From positions 156,490 through 220,489 of IMG/VR virus record IMGVR_UViG_3300049855_000348: a stretch of DNA of 64,000 nucleotides; one strand, written 5' to 3'. Position numbers and translations under genes: made by a program. The notes beneath the pieces were generated by a model. That model was not told the origin of the DNA. It was given only the letters and a program-made list of their open reading frames with translations, and ran no database searches. Below, in pieces: positions 4,798 to 61,189 of this stretch (positions are counted from its first letter, which is position 1; the number at the start of each line of letters is the position of its first letter).

Positions 4798-5075
4798 ACC
4801 ATGACCTCCGTCTTGTGGGTGCTGTATTGTGGGCTGAAGATCGTCAGAGCCTTTACGACGCCATTCCATTCTTTCTTGATGATTTCCTCCGCCTCTGCGA
4901 GCACAGCGTTCATCTCGGCACCGTAGCGGATCCACGCCTGCTTTCTGCCGTTGATGGTGAACGTGATGAGGTATGGCTTCAGACCATTGACCTCTCCCAG
5001 CTTGAAGAAGGACGCCTTGGTGTATTCCACCCAGGCACCTTCGTATTCGGCGGTCTTTTTGTCTTCGTTGTTCAT
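4794..5075 (-). CDS. Hypothetical early protein (leaderless)
   Basis: ATG 6 nt downstream of a TATACT -10 box. Confidence 0.7.
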   Translation of the reverse strand: MNNEDKKTAEYEGAWVEYTKASFFKLGEVNGLKPYLITFTINGRKQAWIRYGAEMNAVLAEAEEIIKKEWNGVVKALTIFSPQYSTHKTEVMV

Positions 5076-5081
5076 GTCCAC

Positions 5082-5109
5082 AGTATAGCGACTAAAAGGT
5101 CGCTGTCAA
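5082..5109 (-). promoter_or_regulatory. Early promoter with embedded palindromic operator
   Basis: TTGACA-GCGACCTTTTAGTCGC-TATACT-6 nt-ATG. Confidence 0.85.
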
Positions 5110-5111
5110 CA

Positions 5112-5246
5112 CCCTATCCGAACAGCGCCTTGAGGCGGAACAGGAAGCTCGGCTTCGTGACGGGGTAGCGGCCAGCGGAGTTTGAGGTGTTACGCACGGT
5201 GTGTTCCTACTAGGGGGAGGCGTTCTGTTTTCTAGAAAATAGAATG
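5112..5246 (+). ncRNA. Candidate small structured RNA followed by a hairpin
   Basis: ORF-free intergenic region with nested stems CCCTA/TAGGG, GGAACA/TGTTCC, CGTGAC/GTTACG, CGCC/GGCG, GAAGC/GCTTC and a hairpin at 5221-5246. Confidence 0.35.
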
Positions 5247-5248
5247 GG

Positions 5249-5461
5249 TTAGCGACCACGTGGGGATGGTTCGCCGTCCTTCTGGACGTAGGGGGCGATC
5301 TTCACACCCGGATTCCAACGTTTCGCAAACGCCGCCTTGTTTCTCTCCCAATGGGCAAGAGCAGCCTCTTCACCCCGTTCGCTTGCGAGGTATTCGTAGA
5401 TCAAGCCATCGCTGACGTTGACGTAGAGGTGGACGAGAGGGAGTTCGGCGGTGGTGCTCAT
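5249..5461 (-). CDS. Hypothetical early protein (leaderless)
   Basis: 70 aa; ATG 6 nt after TATAAT. Confidence 0.75.
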   Translation of the reverse strand: MSTTAELPLVHLYVNVSDGLIYEYLASERGEEAALAHWERNKAAFAKRWNPGVKIAPYVQKDGEPSPRGR

Positions 5462-5467
5462 GCCCAG

Positions 5468-5495
5468 ATTATAGCGACACTTTAGTCTAAGTCAA
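5468..5495 (-). promoter_or_regulatory. Early promoter with operator
   Basis: TTGACT-TAGACTAAAGTGTCGC-TATAAT-6 nt-ATG. Confidence 0.85.
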
Positions 5496-5530
5496 CACCT
5501 TCCTCAACACCGGTCATGGCTACATAAGCC

Positions 5531-5707
5531 ATGAACCTCAAGCCCCTCGTCGAAGATACCTGTTCCGGCAACGTGGCTGCATTTACCCGGGCTCGCATTG
5601 GTGGCGGGGATGACAAGGTCGTCCGCAAGCCTGTAGAAAAGAAGAAGGGTACCGGACTCAAGCCCGGTACCCTCTTCGACTTCGTCAACGGCTACAAGAA
5701 ACGCTAG
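5531..5707 (+). CDS. Small basic protein (58 aa), putative internal head protein
   Basis: MNLKPLVEDTCSG...GYKKR; TACATA hexamer 4 nt upstream; below the ORF-track cutoff. Confidence 0.6.
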   Translation: MNLKPLVEDTCSGNVAAFTRARIGGGDDKVVRKPVEKKKGTGLKPGTLFDFVNGYKKR

Positions 5708-7874: not shown

Positions 7875-7881
7875 GGTTTCT

Positions 7882-8737: not shown

Positions 8738-9360
8738 CAGACGTGGTTGTAGCCGTCCCCACCGTTATCGACGATGCTCTTGGCAGCAACGTTGATCGAT
8801 GGAGCGGTACCAGACTTCGGCCAGTTGGTGTCGAGATCGCGGTTGGCGATATCGGTTTCGTTGACGATGAACGGACGGATCAGACGTTCAGCCCATCCAC
8901 CGACTTCAACCTGAGCCAAGGTGGCTGACTTGTAGAGGATCATGCGACCTTCGTCGCCGACCTGAGCACCTGCGGACATGATCTTTTCGATCACACCGCC
9001 ACCAACGACAGCGCGGGTCGTGTAGGTGTACTCGGATGACGACTTGAGGAACGTGTAGTCCTGGTTCGGTTTGAGACCACTGTTGGTCGGCACGAAGCCA
9101 GAGCCATGCACCGTCGGGACACGCAGAACTTTTGACGGCACCTCTTTCTGCGCTGTCAGACCCGGCTGAACAACGAAGTTCATGTCCCCGATGGTGAACT
9201 GGAGGACCTGATTCTTCTGGTTGTTCTGCGTCTGGAGTGCAGGGTTCTGATTCACTGCCGTCGAATCAAATGGATAGGTGGCGAGCATGGCGTGTTTCTC
9301 CACGCCTATGTAGCTGGACGCAGCGAAAATCAGAGTCAGGAGGGCCAGGGTCCTGATCAT
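8737..9360 (-). CDS. Hypothetical protein with an N-terminal hydrophobic segment
   Basis: MIRTLALLTLIFAASSYIG; overlaps the upstream stop. Confidence 0.7.
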   Translation of the reverse strand: MIRTLALLTLIFAASSYIGVEKHAMLATYPFDSTAVNQNPALQTQNNQKNQVLQFTIGDMNFVVQPGLTAQKEVPSKVLRVPTVHGSGFVPTNSGLKPNQDYTFLKSSSEYTYTTRAVVGGGVIEKIMSAGAQVGDEGRMILYKSATLAQVEVGGWAERLIRPFIVNETDIANRDLDTNWPKSGTAPSINVAAKSIVDNGGDGYNHV

Positions 9361-12300
9361 ACCGGTTTGATCGCCCAGGAGGTCTGCTCATCGACCATGG
9401 TGGCCACGATGGTACCAGCACGGCTGGAACCCGGCACATCGGCGTGGGTGATGACGAAGATCCGCTTCACCCGATTGACCATGGAAGCGATCAGATCCTG
9501 CACGGCACGGCGACCCTTCACGTCGAGGGCGTCGAAGACTTCGTCGAGGGCCAAGAAGCCGGCACGGTGCCGAGAACGCTGACGGGCCAACTCGAAGATC
9601 GAGAATAGCGCAGCCAGATCGGTCCACTTGCGCTGACCGCCTGAGCGCCGGCCATACCGTTCCTGGTAGGTCAGATCCGAGTTGAAGGTGAGGGTCATCT
9701 TCCCGCCGAAGTGTTGTCCGATGTAGGACTGGACGACGAGATTGAGTTGTTTCACGCTCTGGTCAAGCAGGAAACCCCTCATGGAGCCCTTAGCGGCAAA
9801 AGCCTTGTCCCAGAACGTGATGTAAGCCGATTTCAGGTCCAGGGCATGCGCCTGAGCCTTTGAGGTTTCCATCGCAGCGAACGCAGCCTGTCGGTCGGCG
9901 ACCAAACGGTCCTTGGCGATCTTCAGAGCGGCAGCCGGGTCGGTGGCGGTGAGGTTGCGCTCCTCTTGAGCCAGGGCCGCCTCGGTAGCGGCTCCACCAG
10001 CCTCCAGGGCCGACTTTTCTTGCAGGAGGGCCGAGAGTTCCCCGGTGAGGCGTTTGTGCTCATCCTGAGCCTTCTGGAGGGCTTCTTTGGCCGAGACGAG
10101 ATCCGTCACCGCCTGTGATGCCAGGATCAGATCGGCCTTGGTCCGGTAGGCACTCATGATGGCAAGTAGACCGTCGAGGATCCGCTGGAAGCCGGAGGCA
10201 GTGATGATGTCCTCCAGCCTCTCCGGCATGGGCAGGCACTGGTTGGCCTGTTCTGCGAATCGAGCATCGACCTGCTGCCGGCGTACGGCGATGGCCTGCA
10301 ACCGAGCTTCCATGTCCGGCAGGGACTTGGTCAGCGTTTCGAGCACGGTCTTGGCCGCAGCCAACTGGGCCAGGGTGGCGAGACCCTTGAGGGATTCATC
10401 AGCCTGAACTCGCAGTGCCTGGGCTTCGCTGATGAGTTTGGTCTGTTCGGCTTTGTAGGTCCGGTACCCTGCTCGCAGGCTCTCCAACTCAGCGTTGAGA
10501 CCCTTCACCACGTTGACCATCGATTCGCCATTGATCGAAGTCAGACACGTCGGGCAGTCACCACCAGTGGTGAGCTTTGAGAGCTTTTCAGCCTTCTGTG
10601 AGATCGGCGTTGCTTGCGTGGTGGTGGCCTCGGCCTTCGCACCTTCAGCCGCAGCCAACTGATCTTTCTGTGTTGCCTCTTGGCGGAGGACGTTGGCACG
10701 TTCATTGGCAGCAACCACTGCCGCTTCCTGTTTCAGTGCCGCTTCGAGACCAGTGATGCGATCACGAACAGTGCCGATCTCCGACTTGAGGATGTTCTCC
10801 TCGTTGGTGATGTTGTTGTGATCGATGCAGCGGGAATTCCAAAGCGATTGAAAGCGAACGATGTTCTTGTTGGTCTCTTCCGCCTTGTCGACGTTGGCCT
10901 TCGCCTCGACACGGATCGCCTCGACACCACCAGAGAGTAGTTGGACCTTCTCGGTCGCAGCCTTCACCACATCGTTGCTGTACTGAATAGTCTGCTCACC
11001 ACTGGCTTCTGCATACATCAAACGTTCGCGTTCTTGACGCATCTTGACCTGATGGTCGTTCTTGCGCTGGGCCACTGAACTCAACATCACCTGATGATTC
11101 TTTTCAGCGTCGAGGATCTGCGTTTCGATGGCAGAGATCTGCGCTGCTGAGCGTTCGATTTCACCAGCACGAACCTTCTGAATGTTGGCCTGTTGTTCGA
11201 GTTGATCACTCATGAGTTTCTTCAACTCACGAGTCTTCTCCAGGTAAGCGTCGAAGCGTTCGAGACCCAGCATCTCTTCGATCATGGCACGACGTTTCTT
11301 CTCGTCTCCGGTCATGAAGTTGGCCGTCACGTTTTGGCCCATGATGTAGGAACGACTGTAGGTCTCACGGTCGATGCCGATGAGATCGATGATCATCTTC
11401 TGGGTAGCTTTCGGATCACCCTTCTCGAATGACTCTTGATAGACGCCATCCTTGTAGACCTTCACACCAGTACCGCCGAGGTCGTGGTACTTGCGGAAGC
11501 GTTCGATGCTCCAGCCGTTGGCATGGTTCACCCGAACGTAGCAGTTCTTCCCCTTGCCGGTGAACTGAGGGTCGTAGACCACATCGTCAGCCTTCATCTC
11601 ATCACGGATGGTCTCGCCGAAGTAGCACCAGAAGATAGCTTCGAGGAACGTGCTCTTGCCGGCACCGTTCTCACCTTCGAGGTACCACACGCCTGGACGC
11701 AGGTCATCAAAATTGATGGTGATCTTTTCCTTCACACCAAGGAAGCCCTCAAGAGTCAGGCTGGAGACTTCACCATCGAAAGCCATGCCACCCTTTTCGG
11801 CATCTTGGAAACGTGAATTCACCTCAGCGATGATCGATTTGCCGAACTGGATGGTGATGTCCACATCCAATTGACTATCGCCAGTGATGACCGACTTCAC
11901 GAAGGGCTCGACGAGGCCAGCGGCGGAGGTGGCTTCAACACCGAGGACTTCAACCTCCTGATCACGAATCGCTTTCTCGATGACCGACTCTTTGCGTACC
12001 GAGATGACACCGGCAGCTTCGAGCTTCAGTTGCAGGGCTTCGTGCTGCTCATCGGTGACGAGGTCGTCATAGATGACAGTGACGAAGCAGTCCTTGAGTG
12101 TGGTCAGATCCTGCGGCAGATCGCTGACACCGAGAACCTTGAAGGCATCGTGGTGTGGATTGAGGATGAACCGGTCGTTACCGGTATCCATGTCGAGGAC
12201 CATGATACCACGCTGGTCACCGGCATCGCCGAAATTGAACTGGAGGGGTGAGCCGCAATAGGTCACCCGGTGATCCATGCGCTGGAAGACGTGGAAGTGG

Positions 12301-12848
12301 CCAGAGTAGGTGGCCTTGAATGGGGCGAACACGTCGGGACCGACAGCACCAGAGAAGGTGGTCTTGTAGCGGGTGTTCTGTACCGCACCGTTGATGCCGA
12401 GGTGACCGAACACGGTCATCTTGGCGGCACGCTCGGGGAACTGCCGGGCGAAGTCCTGCACGAAGGCGACGATCTTCGACTGGTCTTCGTAGTAGGGGAT
12501 GAACAGGAAATGATCACCTACCGGGGTGATCTCACGGAAGACCTTGATCTTCGGATGCATATCCAGTCCGTCGAGACTGCTGACGGAGGTAGAATGCTTG
12601 AGGTTGAGATCGTGGTTGCCCAGGGTGAGGAACACCGGCCACTTGTCGGCGAGCTTGCGAAAGAAGTTGATGGCAGCCGACTGGCTGACCACATCGACCG
12701 CTTCACGGGTAACCAGGGCATCACCCATGCAGACGACGGCCTGCACGCCTTGTCGTTGGAACTCTTCAATGATCCAGTCGCCGGTTTTGATGATGCGATC
12801 CAGCCCCTGTGGCTGGAAGTGGATGTCAGAGAAGATTCCAAGTTGCAT
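9357..12848 (-). CDS. Mre11-Rad50 (SbcD-SbcC / gp47-gp46) fusion nuclease-ATPase
   Basis: Metallophosphoesterase motifs SDIH, MGD, GNHD, FGH, GHFH, then Walker A GENGAGKST, Q-loop, coiled coil with CPTC zinc hook, signature SGGQ, Walker B LALDEVFDALD, H-loop ITH. Confidence 0.92.
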   Translation of the reverse strand: MQLGIFSDIHFQPQGLDRIIKTGDWIIEEFQRQGVQAVVCMGDALVTREAVDVVSQSAAINFFRKLADKWPVFLTLGNHDLNLKHSTSVSSLDGLDMHPKIKVFREITPVGDHFLFIPYYEDQSKIVAFVQDFARQFPERAAKMTVFGHLGINGAVQNTRYKTTFSGAVGPDVFAPFKATYSGHFHVFQRMDHRVTYCGSPLQFNFGDAGDQRGIMVLDMDTGNDRFILNPHHDAFKVLGVSDLPQDLTTLKDCFVTVIYDDLVTDEQHEALQLKLEAAGVISVRKESVIEKAIRDQEVEVLGVEATSAAGLVEPFVKSVITGDSQLDVDITIQFGKSIIAEVNSRFQDAEKGGMAFDGEVSSLTLEGFLGVKEKITINFDDLRPGVWYLEGENGAGKSTFLEAIFWCYFGETIRDEMKADDVVYDPQFTGKGKNCYVRVNHANGWSIERFRKYHDLGGTGVKVYKDGVYQESFEKGDPKATQKMIIDLIGIDRETYSRSYIMGQNVTANFMTGDEKKRRAMIEEMLGLERFDAYLEKTRELKKLMSDQLEQQANIQKVRAGEIERSAAQISAIETQILDAEKNHQVMLSSVAQRKNDHQVKMRQERERLMYAEASGEQTIQYSNDVVKAATEKVQLLSGGVEAIRVEAKANVDKAEETNKNIVRFQSLWNSRCIDHNNITNEENILKSEIGTVRDRITGLEAALKQEAAVVAANERANVLRQEATQKDQLAAAEGAKAEATTTQATPISQKAEKLSKLTTGGDCPTCLTSINGESMVNVVKGLNAELESLRAGYRTYKAEQTKLISEAQALRVQADESLKGLATLAQLAAAKTVLETLTKSLPDMEARLQAIAVRRQQVDARFAEQANQCLPMPERLEDIITASGFQRILDGLLAIMSAYRTKADLILASQAVTDLVSAKEALQKAQDEHKRLTGELSALLQEKSALEAGGAATEAALAQEERNLTATDPAAALKIAKDRLVADRQAAFAAMETSKAQAHALDLKSAYITFWDKAFAAKGSMRGFLLDQSVKQLNLVVQSYIGQHFGGKMTLTFNSDLTYQERYGRRSGGQRKWTDLAALFSIFELARQRSRHRAGFLALDEVFDALDVKGRRAVQDLIASMVNRVKRIFVITHADVPGSSRAGTIVATMVDEQTSWAIKPV

Positions 12849-12854
12849 CATCTC

Positions 12855-12882
12855 ATCCTAGCGACATTTTGGTCTAAGTCAA
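12855..12882 (-). promoter_or_regulatory. Early promoter with operator (Mre11-Rad50 gene)
   Basis: TTGACT-TAGACCAAAATGTCGC-TAGGAT-6 nt-ATG(12848). Confidence 0.8.
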
Positions 12883-18772: not shown

Positions 18773-18777
18773 GTGAT

Positions 18778-20205: not shown

Positions 20206-20233
20206 AGTATCGCCTTTCGGTGCGGTCGCTCTG

Positions 20234-20261
20234 TGTATAGCGACAAAAAGATCGCGCACAA
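20234..20261 (-). promoter_or_regulatory. Degenerate early promoter/operator
   Basis: TTGTGC-GCGATCTTTTTGTCGC-TATACA. Confidence 0.55.
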
Positions 20262-20274
20262 TAAAAATCAGGCG

Positions 20275-20601: not shown

Positions 20602-20639
20602 GGCTGGCAGACTACTGGCTTGTAGCACCCACACAAGCA

Positions 20640-21400: not shown

Positions 21401-21416
21401 ACACCCAGAGGAAGTC

Positions 21417-22034
21417 ATGCAAACGATCTACGACATCGAAACCATTGCCGTTCTCGATGCCAAGTCGATCAACCGTCGTTCCTTCCGATCTGGACCAGCC
21501 TCACGCATCCTTTCAATTTACGATGACCCTGAGATCCTACGGAAGCGACTTGAAGCGAATGTCCCCTGCCCGCTCAAAATGGCGATTGAAAAAAATGGTT
21601 ACGATCCCGCCAATCCTCCGAAGTTGAAGCGCGGTCATTACATGGATCCGAAGGAGTTGTTCTACCGCACCATGAAAGTTCAGATGGCTGGTGGAATCGA
21701 CAAAGCGGGTCGTGATGGAGAACGTTTCATCGAACTGCTGACCCTGCTGGCGAATGGTTATATGGGTCGCATCATGTTCAAGGATACCGGCTCGATGGCC
21801 AATCTCACTGAAGACATGGTGCAAGAAGCTATCACCAAGTGTGCGATGATCGTCATGCGCTTCAATCCCTGGGACCCCCGCGCCACCAAACCCACTCTCA
21901 ATAACGCTTTCGCCTATTTCACCACGGTTATCCGCAATCGCTTCTATGAAACACTCACTTGCCCATTGGTCGGGTCGGATGTGTTCCTCGAAGATCTCAA
22001 AACCGAAAACCAGTCGATCGGTGATTTGATTTGA
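21417..22034 (+). CDS. T4 gp55-like late sigma factor
   Basis: EDMVQEAITKC...RFNP...NAFAYFTTVIRNRF matches the gp55/sigma region 2 pattern. Confidence 0.8.
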   Translation: MQTIYDIETIAVLDAKSINRRSFRSGPASRILSIYDDPEILRKRLEANVPCPLKMAIEKNGYDPANPPKLKRGHYMDPKELFYRTMKVQMAGGIDKAGRDGERFIELLTLLANGYMGRIMFKDTGSMANLTEDMVQEAITKCAMIVMRFNPWDPRATKPTLNNAFAYFTTVIRNRFYETLTCPLVGSDVFLEDLKTENQSIGDLI

Positions 22035-22058
22035 CTTAGCGACAATTTGGTCTAGATT
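22031..22058 (+). promoter_or_regulatory. Early promoter with inverted operator, upstream of primase
   Basis: TTGACT-TAGCGACAATTTGGTC-TAGATT. Confidence 0.7.
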
Positions 22059-28997: not shown

Positions 28998-29003
28998 GCC
29001 TAG

Positions 29004-29077
29004 AACCTAGCATGGTTGGTGTGGAATACAATAGCGATCAAAATGTCGCTTGATTTTGAAGTCTGATTTGGTACACT
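29004..29077. promoter_or_regulatory. Divergent promoter pair with a central operator
   Basis: Minus: TTGTAT-16-TAGGTT-6-ATG. Plus: TTGATT-16-TACACT-6-ATG. Operator AGCGAT-CAAAAT-GTCGCT at 29033-29050. Confidence 0.7.
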
Positions 29078-29083
29078 GCGGGC

Positions 29084-30678: not shown

Positions 30679-30799
30679 AAACACGGTAACGCTGACCAAG
30701 CAGGAGGTTGTGGAGGAGATCGCCGAGGCGTTCTCCGAGATGGACCTCTTCCTCGACAAGACCACCTGGAGCCGCCTGGGAAGGGCTGCTAGCTGGTAA
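30518..30799 (+). CDS. Hypothetical protein
   Basis: W.HP.T...RIY.N pattern. Confidence 0.65.
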   Translation: MAQYSLGKWRHPKTEQIRIYLNGLDSTEQKVWFERGERKNDQLPPEFGIKLCCENTVTLTKQEVVEEIAEAFSEMDLFLDKTTWSRLGRAASW

Positions 30800-30806
30800 C
30801 TAAGTC

Positions 30807-31477: not shown

Positions 31478-31504
31478 TTGACAGCGACATTTTGGTCTTA
31501 TATT
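31478..31504 (+). promoter_or_regulatory. Early promoter with operator
   Basis: TTGACA-GCGACATTTTGGTCT-TATATT; ATG is 34 nt from the first T, as in the other leaderless copies. Confidence 0.75.
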
Positions 31505-31511
31505 TCCAATC

Positions 31512-35203: not shown

Positions 35204-35458
35204 ATGACTGACGATTCCCTTACCCAACAACACCTCGGTCACGTGATCACCGCTGACAAACGTCAGTATCGTGTCACGACAGAGACCGGGGATATCCTTC
35301 ACGAAGTCAATGATCGGTGTTCCTCTGCGCCGTTGACGAATGTCCAGAGAGGAGTCATGTGGTTGGAAAACCACCTTGGCATTGCCAAAGACGATGACGA
35401 CGAGGTTGGTGGTCTGGCAGTTGACATCGACCAGAGTGTCGCTATTGTTCAGGGATGA
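35204..35458 (+). CDS. Hypothetical protein
   Basis: 84-aa ORF. Confidence 0.6.
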   Translation: MTDDSLTQQHLGHVITADKRQYRVTTETGDILHEVNDRCSSAPLTNVQRGVMWLENHLGIAKDDDDEVGGLAVDIDQSVAIVQG

Positions 35459-36231: not shown

Positions 36232-37161
36232 CCTACGTCCACCTGAACATCCCAAGGTACGATCGGGTGTGGCTGCAACGCCATCCCTGTCCGTACTGCA
36301 AGAAGGAACGCTTCTTTCTCGGCTGTTCCCAGGAATGGTACGGCTTCACCAAGACCTGTCTCCGGTGTGGGGACTCATTTACAGACGAAGGTTGGAACGC
36401 TCGACCGTTTGAACGGGCGTGGCGGAAGAAGGCAGTCGAATCAGCAAGGAGAATCTGGCATGCGTGGCGGAAGAATGAATCCAAAAACCAGGGACCAGAT
36501 CGCCGAGATCCGACCCAAGCTATTTCTTCTTCTCCAGGAGAAGGGGGCCATGTCGACGCTCGACATCTGTGAACTTCTGAAGATCGACCCCAATGTCCTG
36601 GGCACTGTGTTGCGCCACAGTCAGATGACCTTCGATGTGAAGGATATCCAAGCAAACAACCTGAAGCGTCGGATGATCTCACTGAAGTCAGCCAATGCCT
36701 GCTCGGTGGTCTGATTCTTGACTTCATCCAGGTTGTCGCTATTCTCGTCCGCGTGATCACCATCGATACACCAGTCGTGATCGTCGGCGACAAGCTCGGC
36801 GAGATGTGTCTTCTCGATCTCCCCAAGATGATCGGACAGAAGGCGGTTGTCGAATCTGCACAGGGCGAAGGTTTCTGGTGGGTCAGGCTGGAAGACAACA
36901 ATCGGATTCTGCTTCATCAGGACGAACTGAAGGAATTCAATGCACCCTGAACCCAATCTCGGCTCCAGCCAAGTCAAGATCCTCAAGGATCTGAAGAAGT
37001 TGGAATCAGGGTATGGTGAAGTGCCTGGAGATCATCTGGCCAGAGCCCTCGACAAGCTCTACAACAAGGGCTACGTCAAGTTCCAGACCGTGAACGGAAA
37101 AAAGGTCTGGGCCATCACCAAGCAGGGCGTTGAAGCTCTCGATCGTAAAGGACTCTCATGA
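36228..37161 (+). other. Small ORFs: zinc ribbon 36228-36572, wHTH-like 36475-36714, 36753-36950, wHTH-like 36940-37161
   Basis: CPYC...CLRCG; MSTLDICELLKID; LDKLYNKGYV...WAITKQG. Confidence 0.55.
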
Positions 37162-38967: not shown

Positions 38968-40557
38968 ATGATTGAGAAAATCGGTCGTTCTGGCGTCGAA
39001 CTCCACCAAGTCCGCAAGCACGTGGATGCCGATGGAAACGACATCGGACCACGTCGGAAGCCCAACAACGCCTATCTGGACGGCAAGGTGAAGACCCGTG
39101 GCGGACGGGCTCCCCAGGGCTGCACCCGCATGGTCAGCCACGGCTTCGGACCCAGCAAGCTCAACGTCAACAACGACGTGCCCAAATTGTCGAAGCAGCA
39201 GAGGACTCTGCTGCTGGCGATCGATGCAGGAGCCACCACGCTGACGACCGCTGCCTTGAAGGTGGCCGACTCCCTGGTCAAGCTGGACCTTGTGATCTGG
39301 AGCGATTCCAAGAACAACTTCGTCTGTATGGTCGAAGGTCGTCGCGTCGCTGAACTCCTGAGGGAAAACAAAAAGTGAGTGCGAGCCACGCCAAACGCAA
39401 AGTCTCACGCTTAGACTTCGAGAAGATGTTCCCAGAATACGACACTGATTTCTGGGAAGGCATTCTGTTGTTCGACGACATGAACGAGGCTTTCGTTGGA
39501 ATTGCCCAGCAGTTCACCAACGAAACGGTTGCGGTCTACGACTACGATCTCTGCCTCAAGTGCCTCATGAAGAGTGGCATGTCTGAGGAAGATGCCCTCG
39601 AATGGTTTGTGACAAACACCCAGGGTTCGTGGATCGGTGAGCGTACGCCGATGATCCTCTACCAACGTGGCGACAAGAAGAAAAAATGAAAACCACTGAA
39701 CTCATCCTGTGCAAGACAGTCACCACTGAGTCCTTCCCTGATCGTGGGTGGATCGGCCTCGTCATTCCCGGCGAGAACGGCAAAGAGTTGGCCGGTCTCT
39801 ACACCCGCTCGGAACTGTACCGGGAGGTGAAGAAGATCATGGACAAGTACGGCGAGGACAAGGTCCGCATGACCGTCTCGAAGTTCAAGGTCCCTGAGGG
39901 CTACCAACTGATGTTCGCTCCGAGCCGTGATGCCTATGATGGCACGCACGCTCGCAAGCTCATCGAGAAGCACCTGTATGGGTGAATCGTGACGCATCAC
40001 GATCATCGAAAGAACCTCAGAGATCTTTCTCGTGATGACCCAATGCTGACCCTGATCGAGCAGCCGTCGGCTATACAGGCCGACGGCTCTGTGCAGATAG
40101 GGGATGGGCTAGTTCAATCCCAACCTGCTGACCTTACATACAATACCGACAAATTCGGCAACGCCATAAAGGCTGCTGTGTTCGTCGCTGAGGTGGAGAA
40201 CACACAACCAGCATTGCCAGCCGAACCAGGACCAGTCCGGCTCGCAGTAAATCGCACTCATCTGAAAGGTCTCCTGTGCCTGCCCGAGTCATCCCTATCA
40301 CCAGACGAATCTGGAATCGAAAAAAGCTCATAGAACGAATGACTCTGACCAAGCGCGACGACAAGGACGGCATCGTCATCGATGTCAGTCCCGGGGCAGT
40401 GAACTCCATACTCATTGTTGAGACCATGGTGCTGCTGGAGCAATGCCAGAAGGACAAGGTCTCAGTCGAGATCCACACCCACGACGATACCACCTATCGT
40501 TCGTTCAAATACGTGGGTATGGAGAAACTGGCCGTCCTGAAGCGGATGCCGAACTAA
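38968..40557 (+). other. Small hypothetical ORFs (38968-39378, 39375-39689, 39686-39985, 39989-40333, ~40339-40557)
   Basis: Coupled ORFs; 39375-39689 has the common phage pattern AVYDY....MS.E.A.EW..N..G. Confidence 0.65.
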
Positions 40558-40565
40558 CTAGGTGC

Positions 40566-48112: not shown

Positions 48113-48118
48113 TATCTA
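48113..48118. promoter_or_regulatory. Bidirectional putative late promoter hexamer TATCTA/TAGATA
   Basis: 4 nt from ATG 48123 (+) and 5 nt from ATG 48107 (-). Confidence 0.55.
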
Positions 48119-48122
48119 AGTC

Positions 48123-52817: not shown

Positions 52818-52845
52818 AGTATAGCGACCTTTTGGTCGCTGTCAA
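52818..52845 (-). promoter_or_regulatory. Early promoter with perfect operator
   Basis: TTGACA-GCGACCAAAAGGTCGC-TATACT. Confidence 0.88.
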
Positions 52846-54148: not shown

Positions 54149-54176
54149 AGTATAGCGACCTTTTTGTCTAAGTCAA
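54149..54176 (-). promoter_or_regulatory. Early promoter with operator
   Basis: TTGACT-TAGACAAAAAGGTCGC-TATACT. Confidence 0.85.
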
Positions 54177-55414: not shown

Positions 55415-56441
55415 TTATTTTCTCATGTGCGCCGACAGACCCCACCAGCAGAGCGCATCGCGGATGCGGAGGGCGTTCTCGATGTGGTGACGGCGGTTCT
55501 CGTTTTTCATCCTGGCCATCGCACGATGGACGATCAGAAAACGTGCCATGCCGAAGGCGTGGTCGAGGCCGACTGTGTAGCACTTGATCTTGATGTCGCA
55601 GTGATTGGTCGCACAGACGATCTTGCGACCGTGGTATGGCTCGAACCCAGCCGACCGATGCCGCTCGTCGATGCCTGCGGTGTAGATCTCACGCAGACGA
55701 TCTCCGGCAGCATGCTGGAGCGTGAAGCCAGCATCGGCTTCTAGGTGTGGGAAGAGGGTGGCGGTGGCGTTCATGCCGACCTCATGGGCCAGGGTTGGGG
55801 ATTCTCCGCCTTGGGCGGGAGCTTGCCGGCTGCGACGCAGTCGGGGCACACGTCGTACTCGGTGCGGTAGCGGGCGAACTTGTTGCGCTTGCCACGGATG
55901 GGAGCGGTCTCAACCGGTCCACAGGCGGCAAGGTAGCCCCGGGAGTCGTAGGAACCGCTTGGCCACTTGGTGACCACGACTTTGTTGGTGCAGCCTTCGC
56001 AATCGCATTTGCGATGTAGGATGCCGGTGTCTCGGTTCTCGATGATCATCATCCTTCTCCGACTTGAACGAGTTTGCGACGGTAGGTGGGCTTGCGCTTC
56101 TTCTTGGGCGGCGAGTAGCGGTAAGCGCGGCGTTCGTCGCCAAGACTGATCTGAGTGAGGTCGTAGGCGTCGGCGATGACCTGACGTTCAACGAGGTGGT
56201 GTTCCAGGCGGACGCTGCGACCGTTCTTGTGGGCAGGAACTTCCAGCGTTGGCCGGTAGTTGCCAGCGGCGTTCAGGACATCGGTCAGATCTGAGAAACC
56301 GGTATGAAATCCGACCAGACGATCGAGGACTTTCAGGGCGGCGAGGGCAGCAGCGAGGCGCTTGCGACCACCCGGGAACTTGGTGACCTTGTCACCCTCG
56401 ATGATCTGCACTTCGTTGACGGTCGTGTCGTTGTTGCTCAT
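55415..56441 (-). other. Three hypothetical ORFs (55415-55774, 55771-56052 Cys-rich, 56049-56441)
   Basis: ATGA-coupled; the first is leaderless from the 56448 promoter. Confidence 0.65.
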
Positions 56442-56447
56442 GCCGGG

Positions 56448-56475
56448 AGTATAGCGACCAATTTATCTAAGTCAA
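56448..56475 (-). promoter_or_regulatory. Early promoter with operator
   Basis: TTGACT-TAGATAAATTGGTCGC-TATACT-6 nt-ATG. Confidence 0.85.
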
Positions 56476-56478
56476 CAC

Positions 56479-58000
56479 CTACTTGGTCTCTTCGCGTTCC
56501 TTGGCAGCGGTGGCGATTTTTCCCATTTCACGCTGAACGGTTTGCAAGTTGTTCCCGTGGTGGGCTACTATCGCCATCGCGGTGGTATCTTCCCGCACAT
56601 AGTGACCAGCCAGACGAAGGTGCTCCTGAGCCGCTGCGATGTGACGCTGAGCGTCGCGGTACTCACGAGAGGTTAGTTGGTGGGCCATGGTGTTCTTTTC
56701 ATGTGAGAAGTTTCATTTCCCGCAAGGCGTTCTGAGCCGTGGTGTGCATCTCGAAACGAAGATCTGGATTTCCACGAACACGTTCAGATCGATGGTTGGA
56801 GATAGATCTCAGGGCTGCGATGGCGGTCTGTAGTTGCTTGGCCATGTCTTCGATGTCGATGAACTTCACGTAGCTGCCGTCGTTCATCGGTTCGAGATCA
56901 TAGCGTGGACCACCTTCGCAGTCGCCGACTCCGTAGCGTTGGAGAGCCATGAATTATTCCAGTTCGATCCAAATCGAGACATTCACTTCTGGCGTACCGC
57001 CAACGAGGTCGTTGTGATATTTTAGGACGTGTTCGTGTTCGACCTTACGGACGATGCCGTAGACCGGCCCTCTTTCTTCATGGTAACAAATGTGCTCGTC
57101 GATTTTCGGAATCGAGGCACCGGCTGGCCATGTGAGCATGGTCAGGATATCAGAGTCGTTTGGATTTTCCTTTTTGTAATGGTAGATGGCGATGGATTGA
57201 TTGCTGAGCATTGGTTCTTTCCTTACGAATGCTTACAAATTATCTACATACGACTGAAGCGCGTTGTCTCTCTGCTCTGCGGTGTCATATGGGCCATGCT
57301 TGTTGCACCACACTTCATCCCAGAACCAGAACTTGCCATCCTCTTTGAATCGAGGATCTGAGGAATCACCCTTTGCCTTCTTGGTCTCTTCGGCGTTGCG
57401 GTATTCCTTGAGTCCCTTCTCAGCCGCAGCACAGCGCATGCTGATGGCATTGATGCCATTGGTCAGATCACCACCGAAGGGACCGTTGGGATCTCCGAAG
57501 CCGCCGAGGGCTTGTCTGGCGCTGTCGATCTGTGCTCGCATACATTTGACGCAGCAGCCACAGGGGCCATCACCGTCTTCCATGCAGCCGACACCACGGA
57601 GCATGTCGATCTCTGCCTGTTTTTGCTCGTTGCCATGCCTGAGTTTTTGCAATTCTTCCTTGGTGAAGGCATTGACCTTGAGCAGGAAGAAATCAGGTAG
57701 GCCGGTGTCGACGTTGGGGACATCTGGATAACCAACGACCTTGGCGAAGTTGACCAACATGCACTTGCCCTGATAGAACAGTTCGTCGTACGCCTTCTCG
57801 GCGTCGGTGACCTGGGTGAAGTCATGCTCGTTGGCGACCATGAACATGGAGATCTTTTCGAGGAGTTTGAAGTCCTTCGCTCGTCCGATCTCCCCCATGC
57901 ATTCACGCAGTAGCTCGGATCCAGCCTTGATGCGTCCGAGCAGATGTCGGCTGTATTCTTGAAGTTTGGCGATCTCGTCAGCCTGTGTGGATTCTGTCAT
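56479..58000 (-). other. Hypothetical ORFs (56479-56688, 56699-56950, 56954-57211, 57233-58000)
   Basis: Tightly packed minus-strand ORFs. Confidence 0.65.
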
Positions 58001-58007
58001 GGGCTCC

Positions 58008-58035
58008 TAATTAGCGACCTTTTAGGTGCTATCAA
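58008..58035 (-). promoter_or_regulatory. Degenerate early promoter/operator
   Basis: TTGATA-GCACCTAAAAGGTCGC-TAATTA. Confidence 0.55.
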
Positions 58036-58038
58036 TCG

Positions 58039-59450
58039 TTATTTGATCGGTTTGATTGGATAGTGGGCGATCGGAATGATCGTGGCCACACGGCAGATGG
58101 TGCGCTTCGTTCCTGGTTTCAGGAAATACCAGCACACCGATCTGGTTCCGTTGTTGGCGATGGTGACCTGCCAACCCTTTTTTTGCAGTTGCGGTCTGAT
58201 GCGTAGCAGAATATCCAACACTGCCTCAGCCGTCGGTGTGAAGGTCGGCGTGGTCTTGGCCGCAAGTTGTTCCAGATCACGGATGGTTTTGATGTAGGTC
58301 ACGACTGCTCCGCGATGGTGTAGGTGAGGCTGTTGATGTTCTCGTATCCGGCTTTGGTGAGGGCGGCGAGGATCTTCTCCTGAGTTGATACCGAGAAGAC
58401 TTCAACGTCTGGATTCCAGTAGTCGCTGCCGGTCTCTCCAGCTTTCTTGCCATAGAAGGTGCAGAGAAAGGTGCGTTCCTTGGCCTCGAATTGTTCCAGC
58501 ATTCTCGCCACGTTGAAGTGGGTCATCCAGCACCAGCCGTTGACCCCGTCGATGAATGTCGTCGGGTAGATGCCGGTGCGAGGGCTGTGCGGCGAGATGA
58601 TAGATGCCAGGGCGTCTTCGTACTGGCCACAGAAGACCCCTGAGGGATCAGTAGGATCCACGATGCTCAGTAGGAACTCTCCATTGCTGTTGATCTGCAA
58701 CGGCTCCTTGAACTTCTTCTCGAAGCAGGCAGCGAGGTGACGCAACCCCTCGGCCAGCTTCTGTTCACGGGCGATGGCAACCTCGATAGGGCTGCCTTTG
58801 AAGTCATGGTGATGATAGGTCATCAGATCACTTTGAGGCTGAGGTGTAGGTGCGGCAGGTGTGCTCGCCATTGGCGCTGCGGCGTTCTTCGATGCGGGTG
58901 GTCACGGTGCGGAGCATGCCGTTCCACGTGGTGCGGACGGTCAGTTCCCAATCGATGGAGAACTTCCGATCCGGGCTGGTCTCGTTCCAATTGGCGATCT
59001 CACCCTTGGTACGCCACCGCTTGTCGTTGCCGTTGACCGCAAAGAGGGTCGGTCCCTCTTTGGACGCGCACATCTCGATGAACTGCTCGACGATGGTTGG
59101 ATCGGCTTCGACCTTCTTGCCACGGGCGCGGATCTGTTCAGCGGCGGTGGGCATTTGCAGCGTCTTCATTTGAAGATCCTCTCACCGGTGATGATGTCGA
59201 TGGCGTTGGGTCCGAGGTTGGCGCGGATCTCGCACAACTCCTCAGCACTGCGCACACGGGGCTGAGCCCGGTAGGCGGCGAGGAAGGCGTCGATCTCGGC
59301 ATCCAGGGCGGCCTTGTGCTTGACCCGGTCATAGCCAGCCGGCGCATTGGCGTCCAGGCAGTCCATGGGGACGCAGTGGTCGTTCTCGACCCAGCGGAGG
59401 ATACCCTTCTCATCGATCAGGGCTTCGGCGCGGTACGGGCTGTTGTTCAT
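58039..59450 (-). other. Hypothetical ORFs (58039-58302, 58299-58823, 58828-59169, 59166-59450)
   Basis: Coupled ORFs; the first is leaderless. Confidence 0.65.
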
Positions 59451-59456
59451 GCCCGA

Positions 59457-59484
59457 AGTATAGCGACCATTTTGTCGCTGTCAA
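59457..59484 (-). promoter_or_regulatory. Early promoter with operator
   Basis: TTGACA-GCGACAAAATGGTCGC-TATACT-6 nt-ATG. Confidence 0.88.
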
Positions 59485-59530
59485 CAACTGGTTGGTGGTA
59501 TTCGTCTGGTAGCCCCGATATACATAGAAC

Positions 59531-60949
59531 ATGCTCCTGATCGACATCGCTGACAGCACTCTTCCAAGTCACCTCCTGTTGGCACAGGCAGTTATGGAAG
59601 CCGTTGGCAAGGCAAAAGAGATGCCGATGGGCTGGAAGCATGTCTCCAAGTACCTGACCGAAGAAGAGAAAGGGAAGATGCGGAAGGACACCGCACAGAA
59701 GTTGATCAACATCTTCCGTTCCCTGCCCAACGAGAAGGAGTTCGAGGCATCAGCCCGTGCCGGCCAAGCCAAGAAGGGCTGGTACGCAGCCTCCGCCCAG
59801 GCTCTGATGGAAGTCTTCGGACCTGACACCCCTCGCTTTGCCGCCTTGCTGGCCAGCCTCTCCCCTCAGGTGTCGGTGCAGGAGAACCTGCGCAATGCCA
59901 TCCGTTTCTGGGAGAAGTGGATCGAAGCTGGTCGCCCAACCCATGGCAAGGAACTCGACGCTGTTGGCCATGCAGCAGTCGGCCAGCCACGCTGGGAGAA
60001 GATGAACTGGAAGCAGAACGTTCAGCGTTCGATGTTGCACGAAAGCCCCGAGAAGGTTGTCCTGTCTTCGGGTGGCATGGCTGGCAAGGTCGACAGCTTC
60101 CGTGCCAATCTCCTGGGAGATCTCAGCCGCGTCACCAACGACGCCTGGATGGCCCACTTCGCCAACATCGATCAGGCTCTCTTCTCCAGCCCCGCTGGCT
60201 ACCTCGCCATGACTGCCCGCGTCCGCAAGGTCGCTGCCAAGATGGGCTGGTCACCGGCTGAGGTGCAGGAGACCGTGTGGAGCTTCTTCAAGGCTCTGCA
60301 CGAGAAACAGAATCAACAACATCAGGGTCGCAAAACGCTGGAGAAGCTGGGTCATGACGACGTGAACTCGTCTGAAGATTTCGCTGATCTGCTGGTCCGC
60401 GACGAAGAGGTGAAAAATGCACTCAAAAGACTCCGGGATCGAGGGCTCGTTGGAGAACCTACTCCGCGCTCTAGAGACGGAGGGCAAGATCCAGGATCAA
60501 GCCCACAATCCGCAGCAGCGCAAAGAGGTCTTGCTGGCAGTCTTGGGCGGGTCGCCGACCGAGCAGAAGCCCTCAAGCACCGACAAGACCTCCAAGAACT
60601 CGCCACCCGTGGCTACCACTTCCCCAACGCCACCAACATCAAGTACGGGCACCACCACGTTACCTTCACGCTAGTCGATCCACGTGAGATCGCCGAGTGG
60701 AAGGAAAAGATGCGCAAGCCGGAGGACACCTACTCGCTGATCCTTGGTCGCAAGGATGGCAAGTGGGATCGTTTGTCTGGTGTCACGCATGGCATGCCGA
60801 CGGTGACCGACAACGGTACCGATGTCACCATCACCCTGCCATTCGCTGAACGTGAGAAGATCAAGCCAGCAGCGATTGATGCCGAGCGTTGGCGCTACGT
60901 TGATGCGAAGAAAATGGAACGTGCCAAGAAGTTGAACAAGGCAGTTTAG
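59531..60949 (+). CDS. Putative DNA-glycosylase-fold (DUF7178-like) protein, late-expressed
   Basis: GWY...AALLASLSPQ.SV..N...KVDSFRANL.GD..RVTNDAWM...Y...PAEVQETVW; family assignment from memory. Confidence 0.55.
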   Translation: MLLIDIADSTLPSHLLLAQAVMEAVGKAKEMPMGWKHVSKYLTEEEKGKMRKDTAQKLINIFRSLPNEKEFEASARAGQAKKGWYAASAQALMEVFGPDTPRFAALLASLSPQVSVQENLRNAIRFWEKWIEAGRPTHGKELDAVGHAAVGQPRWEKMNWKQNVQRSMLHESPEKVVLSSGGMAGKVDSFRANLLGDLSRVTNDAWMAHFANIDQALFSSPAGYLAMTARVRKVAAKMGWSPAEVQETVWSFFKALHEKQNQQHQGRKTLEKLGHDDVNSSEDFADLLVRDEEVKNALKRLRDRGLVGEPTPRSRDGGQDPGSSPQSAAAQRGLAGSLGRVADRAEALKHRQDLQELATRGYHFPNATNIKYGHHHVTFTLVDPREIAEWKEKMRKPEDTYSLILGRKDGKWDRLSGVTHGMPTVTDNGTDVTITLPFAEREKIKPAAIDAERWRYVDAKKMERAKKLNKAV

Positions 60950-60951
60950 TG

Positions 60952-60979
60952 TTGACTTAGACCAAATGGTCGCTATAAT
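60952..60979 (+). promoter_or_regulatory. Early promoter with operator
   Basis: TTGACT-TAGACCAAATGGTCGC-TATAAT-6 nt-ATG. Confidence 0.88.
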
Positions 60980-60985
60980 GTGGGC

Positions 60986-61189
60986 ATGAGCAACAGCACC
61001 ACCCCCGCCACTAAGACCTACCTCGTCCGCTTCGGCGGCGGTGGTTACAACACGGTCAATGCTACCAGCAAGCGTGAGGCTGAGAAGAAAGCAAAGGACA
61101 AATTCAACTTTGCCATTTCTTCAGTAGCTTTGCCCAAGAAGGGTGAGATCGAAGCTCTCGACGAGTTCTGGGCCAGCCAGTTCCGCTAA
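60986..61189 (+). CDS. Hypothetical early protein (leaderless)
   Basis: MSNSTTPATK...V.A.S..EA..KA. Confidence 0.7.
   Translation: MSNSTTPATKTYLVRFGGGGYNTVNATSKREAEKKAKDKFNFAISSVALPKKGEIEALDEFWASQFR

What the first reader, a model, noticed from the sequence alone, without database searches (positions are those of the whole stretch)
5075..60988. Systematic leaderless early mRNAs: ATG placed exactly 6 nt after the -10 box
Seen: -10 + 6 nt + ATG at 5075, 5461, 12848, 28997, 29084, 56441, 59450 and 60986, and the same 34-nt distance from -35 to ATG at 31512. Many of the 6-nt gaps end in GGC, and none contains an obvious Shine-Dalgarno. Copies at 52818 and 54149 instead have a leader with AAGGA/GAGG. 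Inference: the start codon is the +1 nucleotide. This corrects several ORF-track starts and points to a host that translates leaderless mRNA efficiently, or to a phage strategy that bypasses shut-off of SD-led translation.
Basis: partly seen in the sequence, partly recalled or inferred. Interest (0 to 1): 0.7.

Follow-up and report, generated by a model that had tools for sequence, protein, structure and literature searches.

The report
Promoters fused to start codons
An uncultured 220-kb T4-like freshwater phage places its promoters directly against the start codons of about a fifth of its genes, so these genes are probably read from messenger RNAs with no leader and no ribosome-binding site; this expression style is known elsewhere but has not been described for T4-like or jumbo phages.

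Summary
The window is the last 64 kb of a complete 220,489-bp T4-like metagenomic phage. A 28-nt sigma-70-type promoter (TTGAC-TTAGAC/AGCGAC-N6-GTCGC-TATAcT) occurs 36 times in the genome. In 23 copies ATG lies exactly 6 nt after the -10 box (binomial p about 1e-32). In the window the pattern has 7 exact matches against 0.00 in shuffles.

These ATGs open independently called ORFs, lack Shine-Dalgarno motifs, follow a C(-1)A(+1) start-site context, and in two cases Pfam domains begin at residue 1-2. Orthologues in metagenomic relatives align from residue 1 and keep the arrangement.

It resembles a T4-family late promoter and abuts about 22-30 further start codons, including structural-region genes. 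So the leaderless design is not early-specific. That favours a host that translates leaderless mRNA well over an early shut-off bypass.

No transcription start site (TSS) data could be obtained, and the host is unresolved. This is a new member of a known kind (compare Deinococcus-Thermus and Thermus phage phiYS40).

The parts
5082..5109 (-). Early-type promoter (TTGACAGCGACC-TTTT-AGTCGCTATACT). ATG at 5075 is 6 nt after the -10. Gene 4794-5075, 93 aa, ORFan.
   Evidence: no Pfam hit
5468..5495 (-). Early-type promoter. ATG at 5461 is 6 nt after the -10. Gene 5249-5461, 70 aa, ORFan.
12855..12882 (-). Early-type promoter (-10 TAGGAT). ATG at 12848 is 6 nt after the -10. Gene 9357-12848, 1163 aa, a fused SbcD/Mre11-SbcC/Rad50 protein.
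   Evidence: Pfam Metallophos begins at residue 2 of the one-codon-longer ORF
20234..20261 (-). Degenerate early-type promoter with a leader (AAAGG about 7 nt before ATG 20205). Gene 19816-20205.
21417..22034 (+). Candidate T4 gp55-like late sigma factor. Relevant to the second (late-like) motif class.
   Evidence: phrog_234 'late sigma transcription factor', E 2.8e-7 / 3.7e-6; phrog_12791 hits the same place weakly
28998..29083 (.). Divergent intergenic region with the dyad AGCGAT-CAAAAT-GTCGCT (29028-29055). It holds weaker -10 + 6 nt + ATG arrangements for gene 28626-28997(-) (123 aa) and for a 36-aa hydrophobic peptide at 29084-29194(+).
31478..31505 (+). Variant early-type promoter (TTGACAGCGACATTTTGGTCTTATATTT). 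ATG at 31512 is 34 nt from the start of the -35. Gene 31512-31856, YAcAr/SLOG domain.
   Evidence: Pfam YAcAr profile position 1 aligns to residue 1
35421..35448 (+). ATG at 35455 is 6 nt after the -10. Gene 35455-36231, 258 aa.
36718..36745 (+). Weak early-type copy. GTG at 36753 is 7 nt after the -10. 65-aa ORF.
52818..52845 (-). Early-type promoter with a perfect 7-bp dyad (AGCGACC-AAAA-GGTCGCT), leadered. 32 nt to ATG 52785, with AAAGGA as SD.
54149..54176 (-). Early-type promoter, leadered. 24 nt to ATG 54124, with GAGGA as SD.
56448..56475 (-). Early-type promoter. ATG at 56441 is 6 nt after the -10. Gene 56049-56441, 130 aa.
58008..58035 (-). Degenerate early-type promoter (TTGATA...GTCGCTAATTA). 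ATG at 58000 is 7 nt after the -10. Gene 57233-58000, 255 aa.
59457..59484 (-). Early-type promoter. ATG at 59450 is 6 nt after the -10. Gene 59166-59450, 94 aa. The orthologue in L015 (72% identity) aligns from residue 1 and has a -10 at 7 nt.
60952..60979 (+). Early-type promoter. ATG at 60986 is 6 nt after the -10. Gene 60986-61189, 67 aa.
5521..5527 (+). Late-like motif TACATAA + gcc + ATG 5531 (58-aa ORF).
30797..30803 (+). Late-like motif TAACTAA + gtc + ATG 30807 (165 aa). Orthologues in L012 and L013 align from residue 1 and keep the motif.
40555..40561 (+). Late-like motif TAACTAG + gtgc + ATG 40566 (108 aa).
48113..48119 (+). Late-like motif TATCTAA + gtc + ATG 48123 (565 aa). The motif and spacing are identical in L014 and L015.
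59521..59527 (+). Late-like motif TACATAG + aac + ATG 59531 (DUF7178, 472 aa). L014 and L015 have TAGATA + 5 nt + ATG.
63252..63258 (-). Late-like motif GCTAGATAA + gccc + ATG 63247 (286 aa). Conserved in L014, L015 and L016.

Best explanation
The window belongs to a complete 220-kb T4-like myovirus that relies on the host RNA polymerase.

The early-type promoter. A strong sigma-70-type promoter is repeated about 36 times in the genome: -35 TTGAC, a 16/17-nt spacer, -10 TATAcT. In about 70% of copies the -10 hexamer is followed by 6 nt (consensus cTGGGC) and then ATG.

Proposed mechanism (inferred):
- Transcription starts at the A of the ATG (pyrimidine at -1, purine at +1).
- This gives a 5'-pppAUG mRNA with no leader and no Shine-Dalgarno.
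- A ribosome with initiator tRNA binds the 5'-terminal AUG directly.
- Later cistrons of the same transcript use ordinary AAGGAG-type sites or coupling.

The spacer. It carries a conserved dyad, (A)GCGACC-A4/T4-GGTCGC(T), which is kept in relatives. It most likely binds a dimeric regulator that shuts these promoters off, and it also serves as a recombination module that swaps ORFan cassettes.

The compact layout. In tandem arrays the whole intergenic region is the promoter, and the upstream stop codon lies within a few nt of the -35. Read-through RNA would therefore carry these ATGs without any ribosome-binding site. Expression of each such gene is thereby tied to firing of its own promoter.

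The second class. A T4-late-like box (GCTAGATAA) sits 3-5 nt before ATG at about 22-30 further genes. The leaderless design therefore spans temporal classes and reflects what the unknown host's ribosomes accept.

Shown versus inferred:
- Shown: sequence geometry, statistics, ORF concordance, domain boundaries, conservation in relatives.
- Inferred: the TSS position, the timing, the regulator, and the mode of ribosome loading.
For: Geometry and statistics:
- 23/36 copies have ATG at offset 6 (p 1.4e-32).
- 7 window matches against 0.00 in shuffles.
- The offset profile peaks sharply at 6.
- All such ATGs open ORFs sharing the stop of independently called genes with positive dicodon score.

Start-site context:
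- The 6th/7th nt after the -10 are C (26/36) and A (27/36). Four leadered copies (7651, 80771, 97834, 210665) also have CA at these positions.

Ribosome-binding sites:
- SD cores occur at 3/18 and 1/22 of the two leaderless classes, against 106/242 other genes with a positional peak at -12..-9.

Start codons confirmed by domain boundaries:
- Metallophos from residue 2.
- YAcAr profile position 1 at residue 1.

Relatives at 34-74% amino-acid identity:
- Orthologues align from residue 1 with a -10 or late-like box 3-8 nt upstream.
- L016 has a diverged promoter (TTGACAA..GCTAAGAT) and still places ATG at 7-8 nt in 5 of 6 sites.

Transcription machinery:
- No phage sigma70_r2 or single-subunit RNAP was found.
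- A gp55-like candidate is present.

Compact layout:
- The upstream stop is -4..+8 nt from the -35 in 14 of 22 tandem cases.
- There is no upstream hairpin.

Known geometry elsewhere:
- -10 motif 6-7 bp before the ORF in Deinococcus (PMC12340547).
- T4 late box at -13..-6, and the Aeh1 variant (a/g)C at -13/-12 (PMC2988020).
Against: - No 5'-end data. The only RNA library holding this phage is stored as short low-depth contigs. One RNA contig runs straight across a promoter copy (G000 85122), so read-through RNA or DNA carry-over exists.
- The -35/-10 pair has a 16-nt spacer as scored by the consensus scan and lacks a TGn extended -10.
- The strongly conserved spacer could mean the promoter needs a phage factor, that is, it may not be plainly 'early'.
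- The late-like box geometry puts the A of ATG at -1/+1 only if the box is aligned as nnTAGATA, and the gp55-like hit is weak (28 bits).
- The host is unknown, so its capacity for leaderless translation is untested.
- No phage IF1, IF3 or S21 was found that might tune initiation.
Confidence: 0.75

Rival explanations
1. The 28-nt element is a phage-factor-dependent (middle-type, activator- or sigma-appropriation-like) promoter rather than an unaided early promoter. The conserved TAGAC/GCGAC...GTCGC boxes would be the factor's recognition site. Transcripts would still be leaderless.
For: - Spacer positions are as conserved as the hexamers.
- The spacer boxes persist in relatives even where the -35 degenerates to TTGTAT or TTGCAT.
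- Several downstream genes are replication or recombination functions, which are typical middle genes in T4 (PMC2988021).
Against: - TTGAC and TAnnnT are near-consensus at proper spacing, which unaided holoenzyme should use.
- T4 early promoters also show extra conserved positions without needing a factor (PMC2988021).
- The box is a dyad, which is more typical of a repressor operator than of a MotA-type box.
- No MotA/AsiA search was done.
Confidence: 0.2
2. The repeat is mainly a recombination or cassette boundary or a protein-binding repeat, not an active promoter. The genes would be translated from long read-through polycistronic RNAs by SD-independent internal initiation or 70S scanning, and the ATG spacing would be a by-product of copying the whole cassette junction.
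For: - There are no terminators between tandem genes, and an RNA-library contig spans one copy.
- At the syntenic site beside DUF7178 the element is kept while the downstream ORF differs between relatives. This resembles the PeSL cassettes of T4-like phages (PMC4122927).
Against: - A boundary repeat does not explain the near-perfect -35/-10 at canonical spacing, or the C-1/A+1 context kept in leadered copies.
- It does not explain why a diverged promoter in L016 keeps ATG at 7-8 nt.
- It does not explain why a second, unrelated motif shows the same adjacency.
- Leadered copies carry proper SDs at proper distance.
Confidence: 0.07
3. The ATGs next to the -10 box are not the true start codons. 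Translation would begin at downstream in-frame codons with conventional ribosome-binding sites.
For: Most products are small ORFans with no family match, so their N-termini cannot be checked by homology.
Against: - Domain profiles begin at residue 1-2 where a family exists.
- Orthologues align from residue 1.
- The dicodon score is positive from the ATG, and the ATG is the called start in most cases.
Confidence: 0.03

Closest known systems
Leaderless genes with the -10 element adjacent to the ORF in Deinococcus-Thermus (also common in Actinobacteria)
   Same: - TANNNT lies about 6-7 bp before the start codon and there is no ribosome-binding site.
- The -10 acts as the promoter.
- An added -35 boosts output.
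- Annotated starts need correcting (PMC12340547).
- The geometry is the same here.
   Different: - Here the arrangement is in a phage, with a full consensus -35 and a conserved dyad in the spacer.
- It is repeated almost identically about 36 times.
- The TSS is not mapped here.
Thermus thermophilus phage phiYS40 (and P23-45) leaderless middle/late transcripts
   Same: A large myovirus that makes most transcripts of a temporal class without leaders, in a host that handles leaderless mRNA (review PMC3594737, citing Sevostyanova et al. 2007).
   Different: - The phage lineage, promoter sequences and host are unrelated.
- In phiYS40 the early class is not the leaderless one, whereas here both classes appear leaderless.
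- phiYS40 infection shifts host IF2/IF3 levels; that could not be tested here, and no phage-encoded IF1 or IF3 gene was found.
T4 early promoters and PeSL (promoter-early stem-loop) cassettes of T4-like phages
   Same: - Near-consensus sigma-70 promoters with extra conserved positions, repeated before small ORFans (PMC2988021).
- The repeats mark sites of cassette exchange between relatives (PMC2839356, PMC4122927).
- Here the promoter is kept but the ORF is swapped beside DUF7178.
   Different: - No stem-loop or terminator precedes the promoter.
- There is no TGn or A/T-rich UP element.
- By my own recollection (not checked here), T4 transcripts have leaders with SD sites, whereas here the ATG is at +1.
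T4-family late promoters (gp55-dependent TATAAATA box at -13..-6; Aeh1 variant (a/g)CTAAATA)
   Same: - The second motif, GCTAGATA(A), differs from the Aeh1-type box at one position.
- It has no -35.
- It precedes sheath- and portal-region genes and other large genes.
- A gp55-like protein is present (PMC2988020).
   Different: - In about 22-30 cases the box is only 3-5 nt from the ATG, so the late transcript would be leaderless.
- I know of no report of this for T4-type late genes (my own knowledge, not searched exhaustively).
Jumbo phages with mapped transcriptomes (phiKZ, AR9)
   Same: Many repeated, highly conserved phage-specific promoters.
   Different: - phiKZ has no leaderless transcript among 65 TSSs (PMC8244752).
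- AR9 5' UTRs are 26-491 nt (PMC5312081).
- Both use phage RNAPs, whereas this phage shows sigma-70-type promoters and no RNAP gene hit.

Membership tests
Leaderless mRNA genes driven by a -10 element adjacent to the ORF | -10 hexamer TANNNT ending 6-7 nt before the start codon | tested here: met
   23/36 copies at exactly 6 nt and 3 at 7 nt; window pattern 7 against 0.00 expected
Leaderless mRNA genes driven by a -10 element adjacent to the ORF | No Shine-Dalgarno sequence before the start codon | tested here: met
   SD 4-mer in 3/18 (early-type) and 1/22 (late-like), against 15% background and 44% of other genes
Leaderless mRNA genes driven by a -10 element adjacent to the ORF | Mapped primary 5' end at, or within a few nt of, the start codon | not testable with these tools
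   The only RNA run (X3) is kept as short contigs at depth 2-12 with no 5'-end information
Leaderless mRNA genes driven by a -10 element adjacent to the ORF | The adjacent ATG is the true translation start | tested here: met
   Pfam profiles start at residue 1-2; orthologues align from residue 1; ORF concordance. Protein-level proof is not available.
T4-type early (sigma-70) promoters | Near-consensus -35 and -10 at 16-18 nt spacing | tested here: met
   10-11 of 12 matches, spacer 16
T4-type early (sigma-70) promoters | TGn extended -10 and A/T-rich UP element | tested here: not met
   Positions -15..-13 are CGC. Upstream consensus is aGGTG, often containing the upstream gene's stop codon.
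T4-type early (sigma-70) promoters | Active immediately after infection without phage proteins | not testable with these tools
   No infection time course; host unknown
PeSL mobile regulatory cassettes of T4-like phages | Composite of a terminator stem-loop followed by an early promoter | tested here: not met
   Upstream 50-nt MFE is -11.5 against -11.9 for genomic controls; terminator-like sites are not above shuffles
PeSL mobile regulatory cassettes of T4-like phages | Repeats flank variable ORFs and mark exchange points between related phages | tested here: inconclusive
   Beside DUF7178 the promoter is conserved but the downstream ORF differs in the window, L014 and L015. The window gene's orthologue sits elsewhere in L015. 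Only one site was examined.
T4-family late promoters (gp55-dependent) | 8-bp A/T-rich box at about -10 without a -35, upstream of late (structural) genes | tested here: met
   TAGATA[AG] occurs 21 times, 19 outside early-type promoter copies and most of those just upstream of called genes. It precedes sheath- and portal-region genes. There is no conserved upstream element.
T4-family late promoters (gp55-dependent) | gp55-type late sigma encoded by the phage | tested here: inconclusive
   Window 21417-22034 hits phrog_234 at E 3.7e-6 over 57 of 181 profile positions. T4 gp55 itself finds nothing by single-sequence search.
T4-like (gp23/gp20) myoviruses | T4-type major capsid, portal and sheath proteins | tested here: met
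   Pfam Gp23 1.2e-52, Portal_T4 6.9e-80, Phage_sheath_1C 2.9e-10

The most novel reading that the evidence does not exclude
In this uncultured clade of T4-like jumbo phages both the sigma-70-type early promoters and the gp55-type late promoters are fused to start codons. Because intergenic regions consist of nothing but the promoter, a gene is translatable only from the transcript that starts at its own promoter. Read-through RNA would be translationally silent. This would be a built-in insulation device giving per-gene temporal control, reinforced by a repressor acting on the dyad in the promoter spacer.
Probability: 0.25. Interest if true: 0.7.

Novelty: new member of a known kind. Interest (0 to 1): 0.55.

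Why it matters
- About 50 of roughly 280 genes of a complete jumbo phage appear to be expressed from leaderless mRNAs under two promoter classes. This would extend a mode known from Deinococcus-Thermus, Actinobacteria, archaea and Thermus phages to the T4 superfamily.
- It gives a practical rule for correcting start codons in this clade, where gene callers read through the promoter.
- It provides a host-prediction clue: a host with efficient leaderless translation and sigma-70 TTGAC/TATAcT promoters.
- It offers a compact 40-bp promoter-plus-start module whose strength and regulation could be tested directly.
- It raises a testable idea: fusing promoter and start codon makes translation depend on promoter firing.

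Tried and rejected
Searches for relatives:
- Nucleotide and protein searches of the INPHARED phage collection found no close relative. The portal's best hits are only about 30% identical (Microcystis, Flavobacterium and Ralstonia phages).
- The promoter pattern in IMG/VR gave only single chance-like hits. In JGI metagenome contigs one short true relative, L011, turned up.
- A RecA-like protein or profile found nothing in IMG/VR or in GTDB genomes.
- The host is therefore unresolved.

Searches of the phage genome for specific genes:
- No psbA.
- No sigma70_r2 or T7-type RNAP.
- No IF3, S21 or IF1.
- T4 gp55 by single sequence found nothing.

RNA evidence:
- Two run searches and two read layings gave only short, low-depth metatranscriptome contigs. 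There was no start-site information, and one contig spanned a promoter.

Ideas rejected:
- PeSL-type stem-loops upstream of the promoters were looked for and not found.
- The phage tRNA-Met(CAT) is not initiator-like, so there is no phage initiator tRNA story.
- Literature searches for the motif strings returned only unrelated primer sequences.
- One relative's contig had no DNA on file.
- My first SD-guided start picking was biased towards 4-mers. It was replaced by the unbiased positional test.

Full report
**What the window is.** The 64-kb window is the right end (G000:C1:156490-220489) of a single 220,489-bp virus record. The record has direct terminal repeats and is rated 100% complete. 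It was assembled from a freshwater-sediment metagenome and has 56% G+C.

It is a T4-like myovirus: Pfam Gp23 major capsid 1.2e-52, Portal_T4 6.9e-80, tail sheath. It also encodes:
- a DnaE-type polymerase;
- helicases, a primase, a RecA/UvsX-like protein, a thymidylate synthase (PHROG phrog_85) and dNMP kinase;
- 33 tRNAs and a one-piece tmRNA.

No sigma70_r2 domain or single-subunit RNAP was found. It has no close cultured relative. Relatives exist only as metagenomic contigs.

**Check of the observation.** The core element is 28 nt: TTGAC-(T/A)(T/G)(A/C)GAC-N6-GTCGC-TATAcT. That is a near-consensus -35, a 16-nt spacer (17 if the -35 is read as GTTGAC) and a -10.
- In the window, TTGAC-N17-TAnnnT-N6-ATG has 7 exact matches against 0.00 in 100 dinucleotide-preserving shuffles.
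- Genome-wide there are 36 good copies, and 23 have ATG exactly 6 nt after the -10 (p = 1.4e-32 given an ATG frequency of 0.016).
- One further copy has GTG at 6 nt, three have a start at 7 nt and one at 9 nt.
- The offset profile is a spike at 6.
- The remaining copies have leaders with 24-55 nt between the -10 box and the start codon; several, including the two window copies at 52818 and 54149, carry AAGGA, GAGGA or GGAG at proper distance.

**Are the ATGs real starts, and is the A likely +1?**
- Each -10-adjacent ATG opens an ORF that ends at the stop of a gene called independently with a dicodon model, and the coding score is positive.
- The SbcD/SbcC-fusion gene at 12848 has its Metallophos domain from residue 2.
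- The YAcAr gene at 31512 matches profile position 1 at residue 1.
- SD cores are at background level or below before these starts (3/18). Other genes show 44% with a clear positional peak at -12..-9, so the phage does use SD-led initiation elsewhere.
- The 6th and 7th nucleotides after the -10 are C (26/36) and A (27/36). Four leadered copies (7651, 80771, 97834, 210665) also have CA at these positions.
- This matches the usual pyrimidine(-1)/purine(+1) start-site preference (established knowledge). With a -10 at -12..-7 the A of ATG is +1.
- The same 6-7-bp geometry is documented for leaderless genes of Deinococcus-Thermus (PMC12340547).

**Relatives.**
- Orthologues on metagenomic contigs (34-74% amino-acid identity) align from residue 1 and keep a promoter element 3-8 nt upstream.
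- Contigs at about 60% identity keep the same spacer boxes even where the -35 decays.
- A more distant contig (L016, about 50% identity) has a different promoter flavour (TTGACAA...GCTAAGAT). It still places ATG 7-8 nt after the -10 in 5 of 6 sites.
- Gene callers on those contigs often start at an ATG inside the -10 (TAAGATG), or read through the whole promoter, as in L015 (MEWEKVVVLDKKVANIQP|M...).
- So the rule does correct annotated starts.

**A second, unreported class.** K-mer enrichment upstream of genes exposed GCTAGATAA.
- The generalised form TAnnTA[AG]-N3-4-(ATG/GTG) occurs 34 times in the genome. Thirty are at in-frame start candidates of called genes, and 22 coincide with the predicted start.
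- TAGATA[AG]-N3-4-ATG occurs 7 times against 0.33 in shuffles.
- The box also occurs 15-30 nt upstream of SD-led starts of sheath- and portal-region genes. It therefore behaves like a promoter that is sometimes, not always, fused to the ATG.
- Aligned as nnTAGATA it differs at one position from the Aeh1-type T4-family late box ((a/g)C at -13/-12, box at -13..-6; PMC2988020). That alignment puts the A of ATG at -1 or +1.
- A gp55-like late sigma candidate lies at window 21417-22034 (phrog_234, E 3.7e-6).
- Window examples are the starts at 5531, 30807, 40566, 48123, 59531 (DUF7178) and 63247. Orthologues keep motif and spacing.
- The leaderless layout is therefore not an early-gene peculiarity.

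**Architecture and proposed mechanism.**
- Of 28 leaderless-type early copies, 22 follow a gene on the same strand. In 14 of these the upstream stop lies -4 to +8 nt from the -35, and in five the TGA inside TTGAC is itself the stop.
- There is no upstream hairpin, and terminator-like sites are not above chance.
- The intergenic region is therefore just the promoter, and read-through RNA would present these ATGs with no ribosome-binding site.
- I infer that each such gene is translated essentially from its own 5'-AUG transcript.
- The spacer holds a dyad, perfect in some copies (AGCGACC-AAAA-GGTCGCT at 52818-52845). It lies upstream of the inferred start site, so on that reading it acts as DNA. 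A dimeric regulator site is the most economical reading, but no regulator was identified.
- T4 early promoters also carry extra conserved positions (PMC2988021).
- Repeated early promoters mediate cassette exchange in T4-like phages (PMC2839356, PMC4122927). Beside DUF7178 the promoter is conserved while the downstream ORF differs among the window, L014 and L015. The defining PeSL stem-loop is absent.

**What could not be settled.**
- No start sites could be mapped. The one RNA library holding this phage is stored as short contigs at depth 2-12, and one contig spans a promoter copy.
- 'Early' timing rests on promoter type and gene content only.
- The host is unknown. No relatives are present in GTDB genomes or IMG/VR. 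There is no psbA and no phage IF1, IF3 or S21.
- The phage tRNA-Met is not initiator-like.

**Comparison and verdict.**
- Leaderless expression from a -10 next to the ORF is established in Deinococcus-Thermus (PMC12340547).
- It is also established in Thermus phage phiYS40, whose middle/late transcripts are mostly leaderless (PMC3594737).
- Mapped jumbo phages phiKZ and AR9 show none (PMC8244752, PMC5312081).
- This is therefore a new member of a known kind. Unusual features are that the phage is T4-like, that two promoter classes are involved, and that the promoter and start form an extremely compact, repeated module.
- Confidence that these genes are expressed as leaderless (0-3-nt leader) mRNAs is about 0.75. 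Interest is 0.55.

Noticed in passing
G000 18491-23006 and 39879-40769; G000 85462-85837 (= L021:13462-13837, minus strand): The phage carries 33 tRNA genes in two clusters and a one-piece tmRNA (Rfam RF00023, 97 bits). The single tRNA-Met(CAT) has a paired 1:72 and is not initiator-like.
   Followed up: partly
window 21417-22034 (+): Candidate gp55-like late sigma factor (phrog_234, E 3.7e-6, region-2-like stretch only), next to the primase gene.
   Followed up: partly
window 9357-12848 (-): Mre11/SbcD-like nuclease (Metallophos, residues 2-93) and Rad50/SbcC-like ATPase (AAA_23, SbcC Walker B) are fused in one 1163-aa ORF. In T4 they are separate genes 47 and 46.
   Followed up: no
window 29084-29194 (+): 36-aa hydrophobic peptide (MFKLPILAVLLIATFACGLYV...) directly after a TGgTACACT extended -10 plus 6 nt. 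It is too short for the ORF listing.
   Followed up: no
genome-wide; window examples 56475(-), 52845(-), 60952(+): The upstream gene's stop codon lies within a few nt of the -35 (for example aagTAGgtgTTGAC). In five genome copies the TGA inside TTGAC is the stop, so the whole intergenic region is the promoter.
   Followed up: yes
L015:8852-9262 (-) and L016 genes starting at 20516, 4879 and 3113 (-): Public gene calls on relatives start inside or upstream of the promoter (an ATG within TAAGATG, or read-through of the whole element). This adds spurious N-terminal residues.
   Followed up: yes
window 59166-59450 versus L014:9626-9931 and L015:8852-9262: At the syntenic position beside DUF7178 the promoter is conserved, but the first gene downstream is a different, unrelated ORF in each phage. 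The window gene's orthologue sits elsewhere in L015 (7990-8268).
   Followed up: partly
G000 124178-136162 (-): A single 3994-aa ORF in the structural region, preceded by gTAGGTAAgtc-ATG (late-like motif fused to the start).
   Followed up: no
G000 102700-102740 (-): One TAGATAG box sits in the loop of a terminator-like hairpin (cccgctggcTAGATAGgccagcggg + T-run) upstream of a 1249-aa gene. This suggests a combined terminator and promoter.
   Followed up: no
window 55567-55827, 56565-56715, 60062-60840; L029 (G000 141300-147299): A sediment metatranscriptome library (X3) holds 100%-identical short contigs from both early-type and structural regions of this phage. The phage, or its DNA, was present in that sample.
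   Followed up: partly
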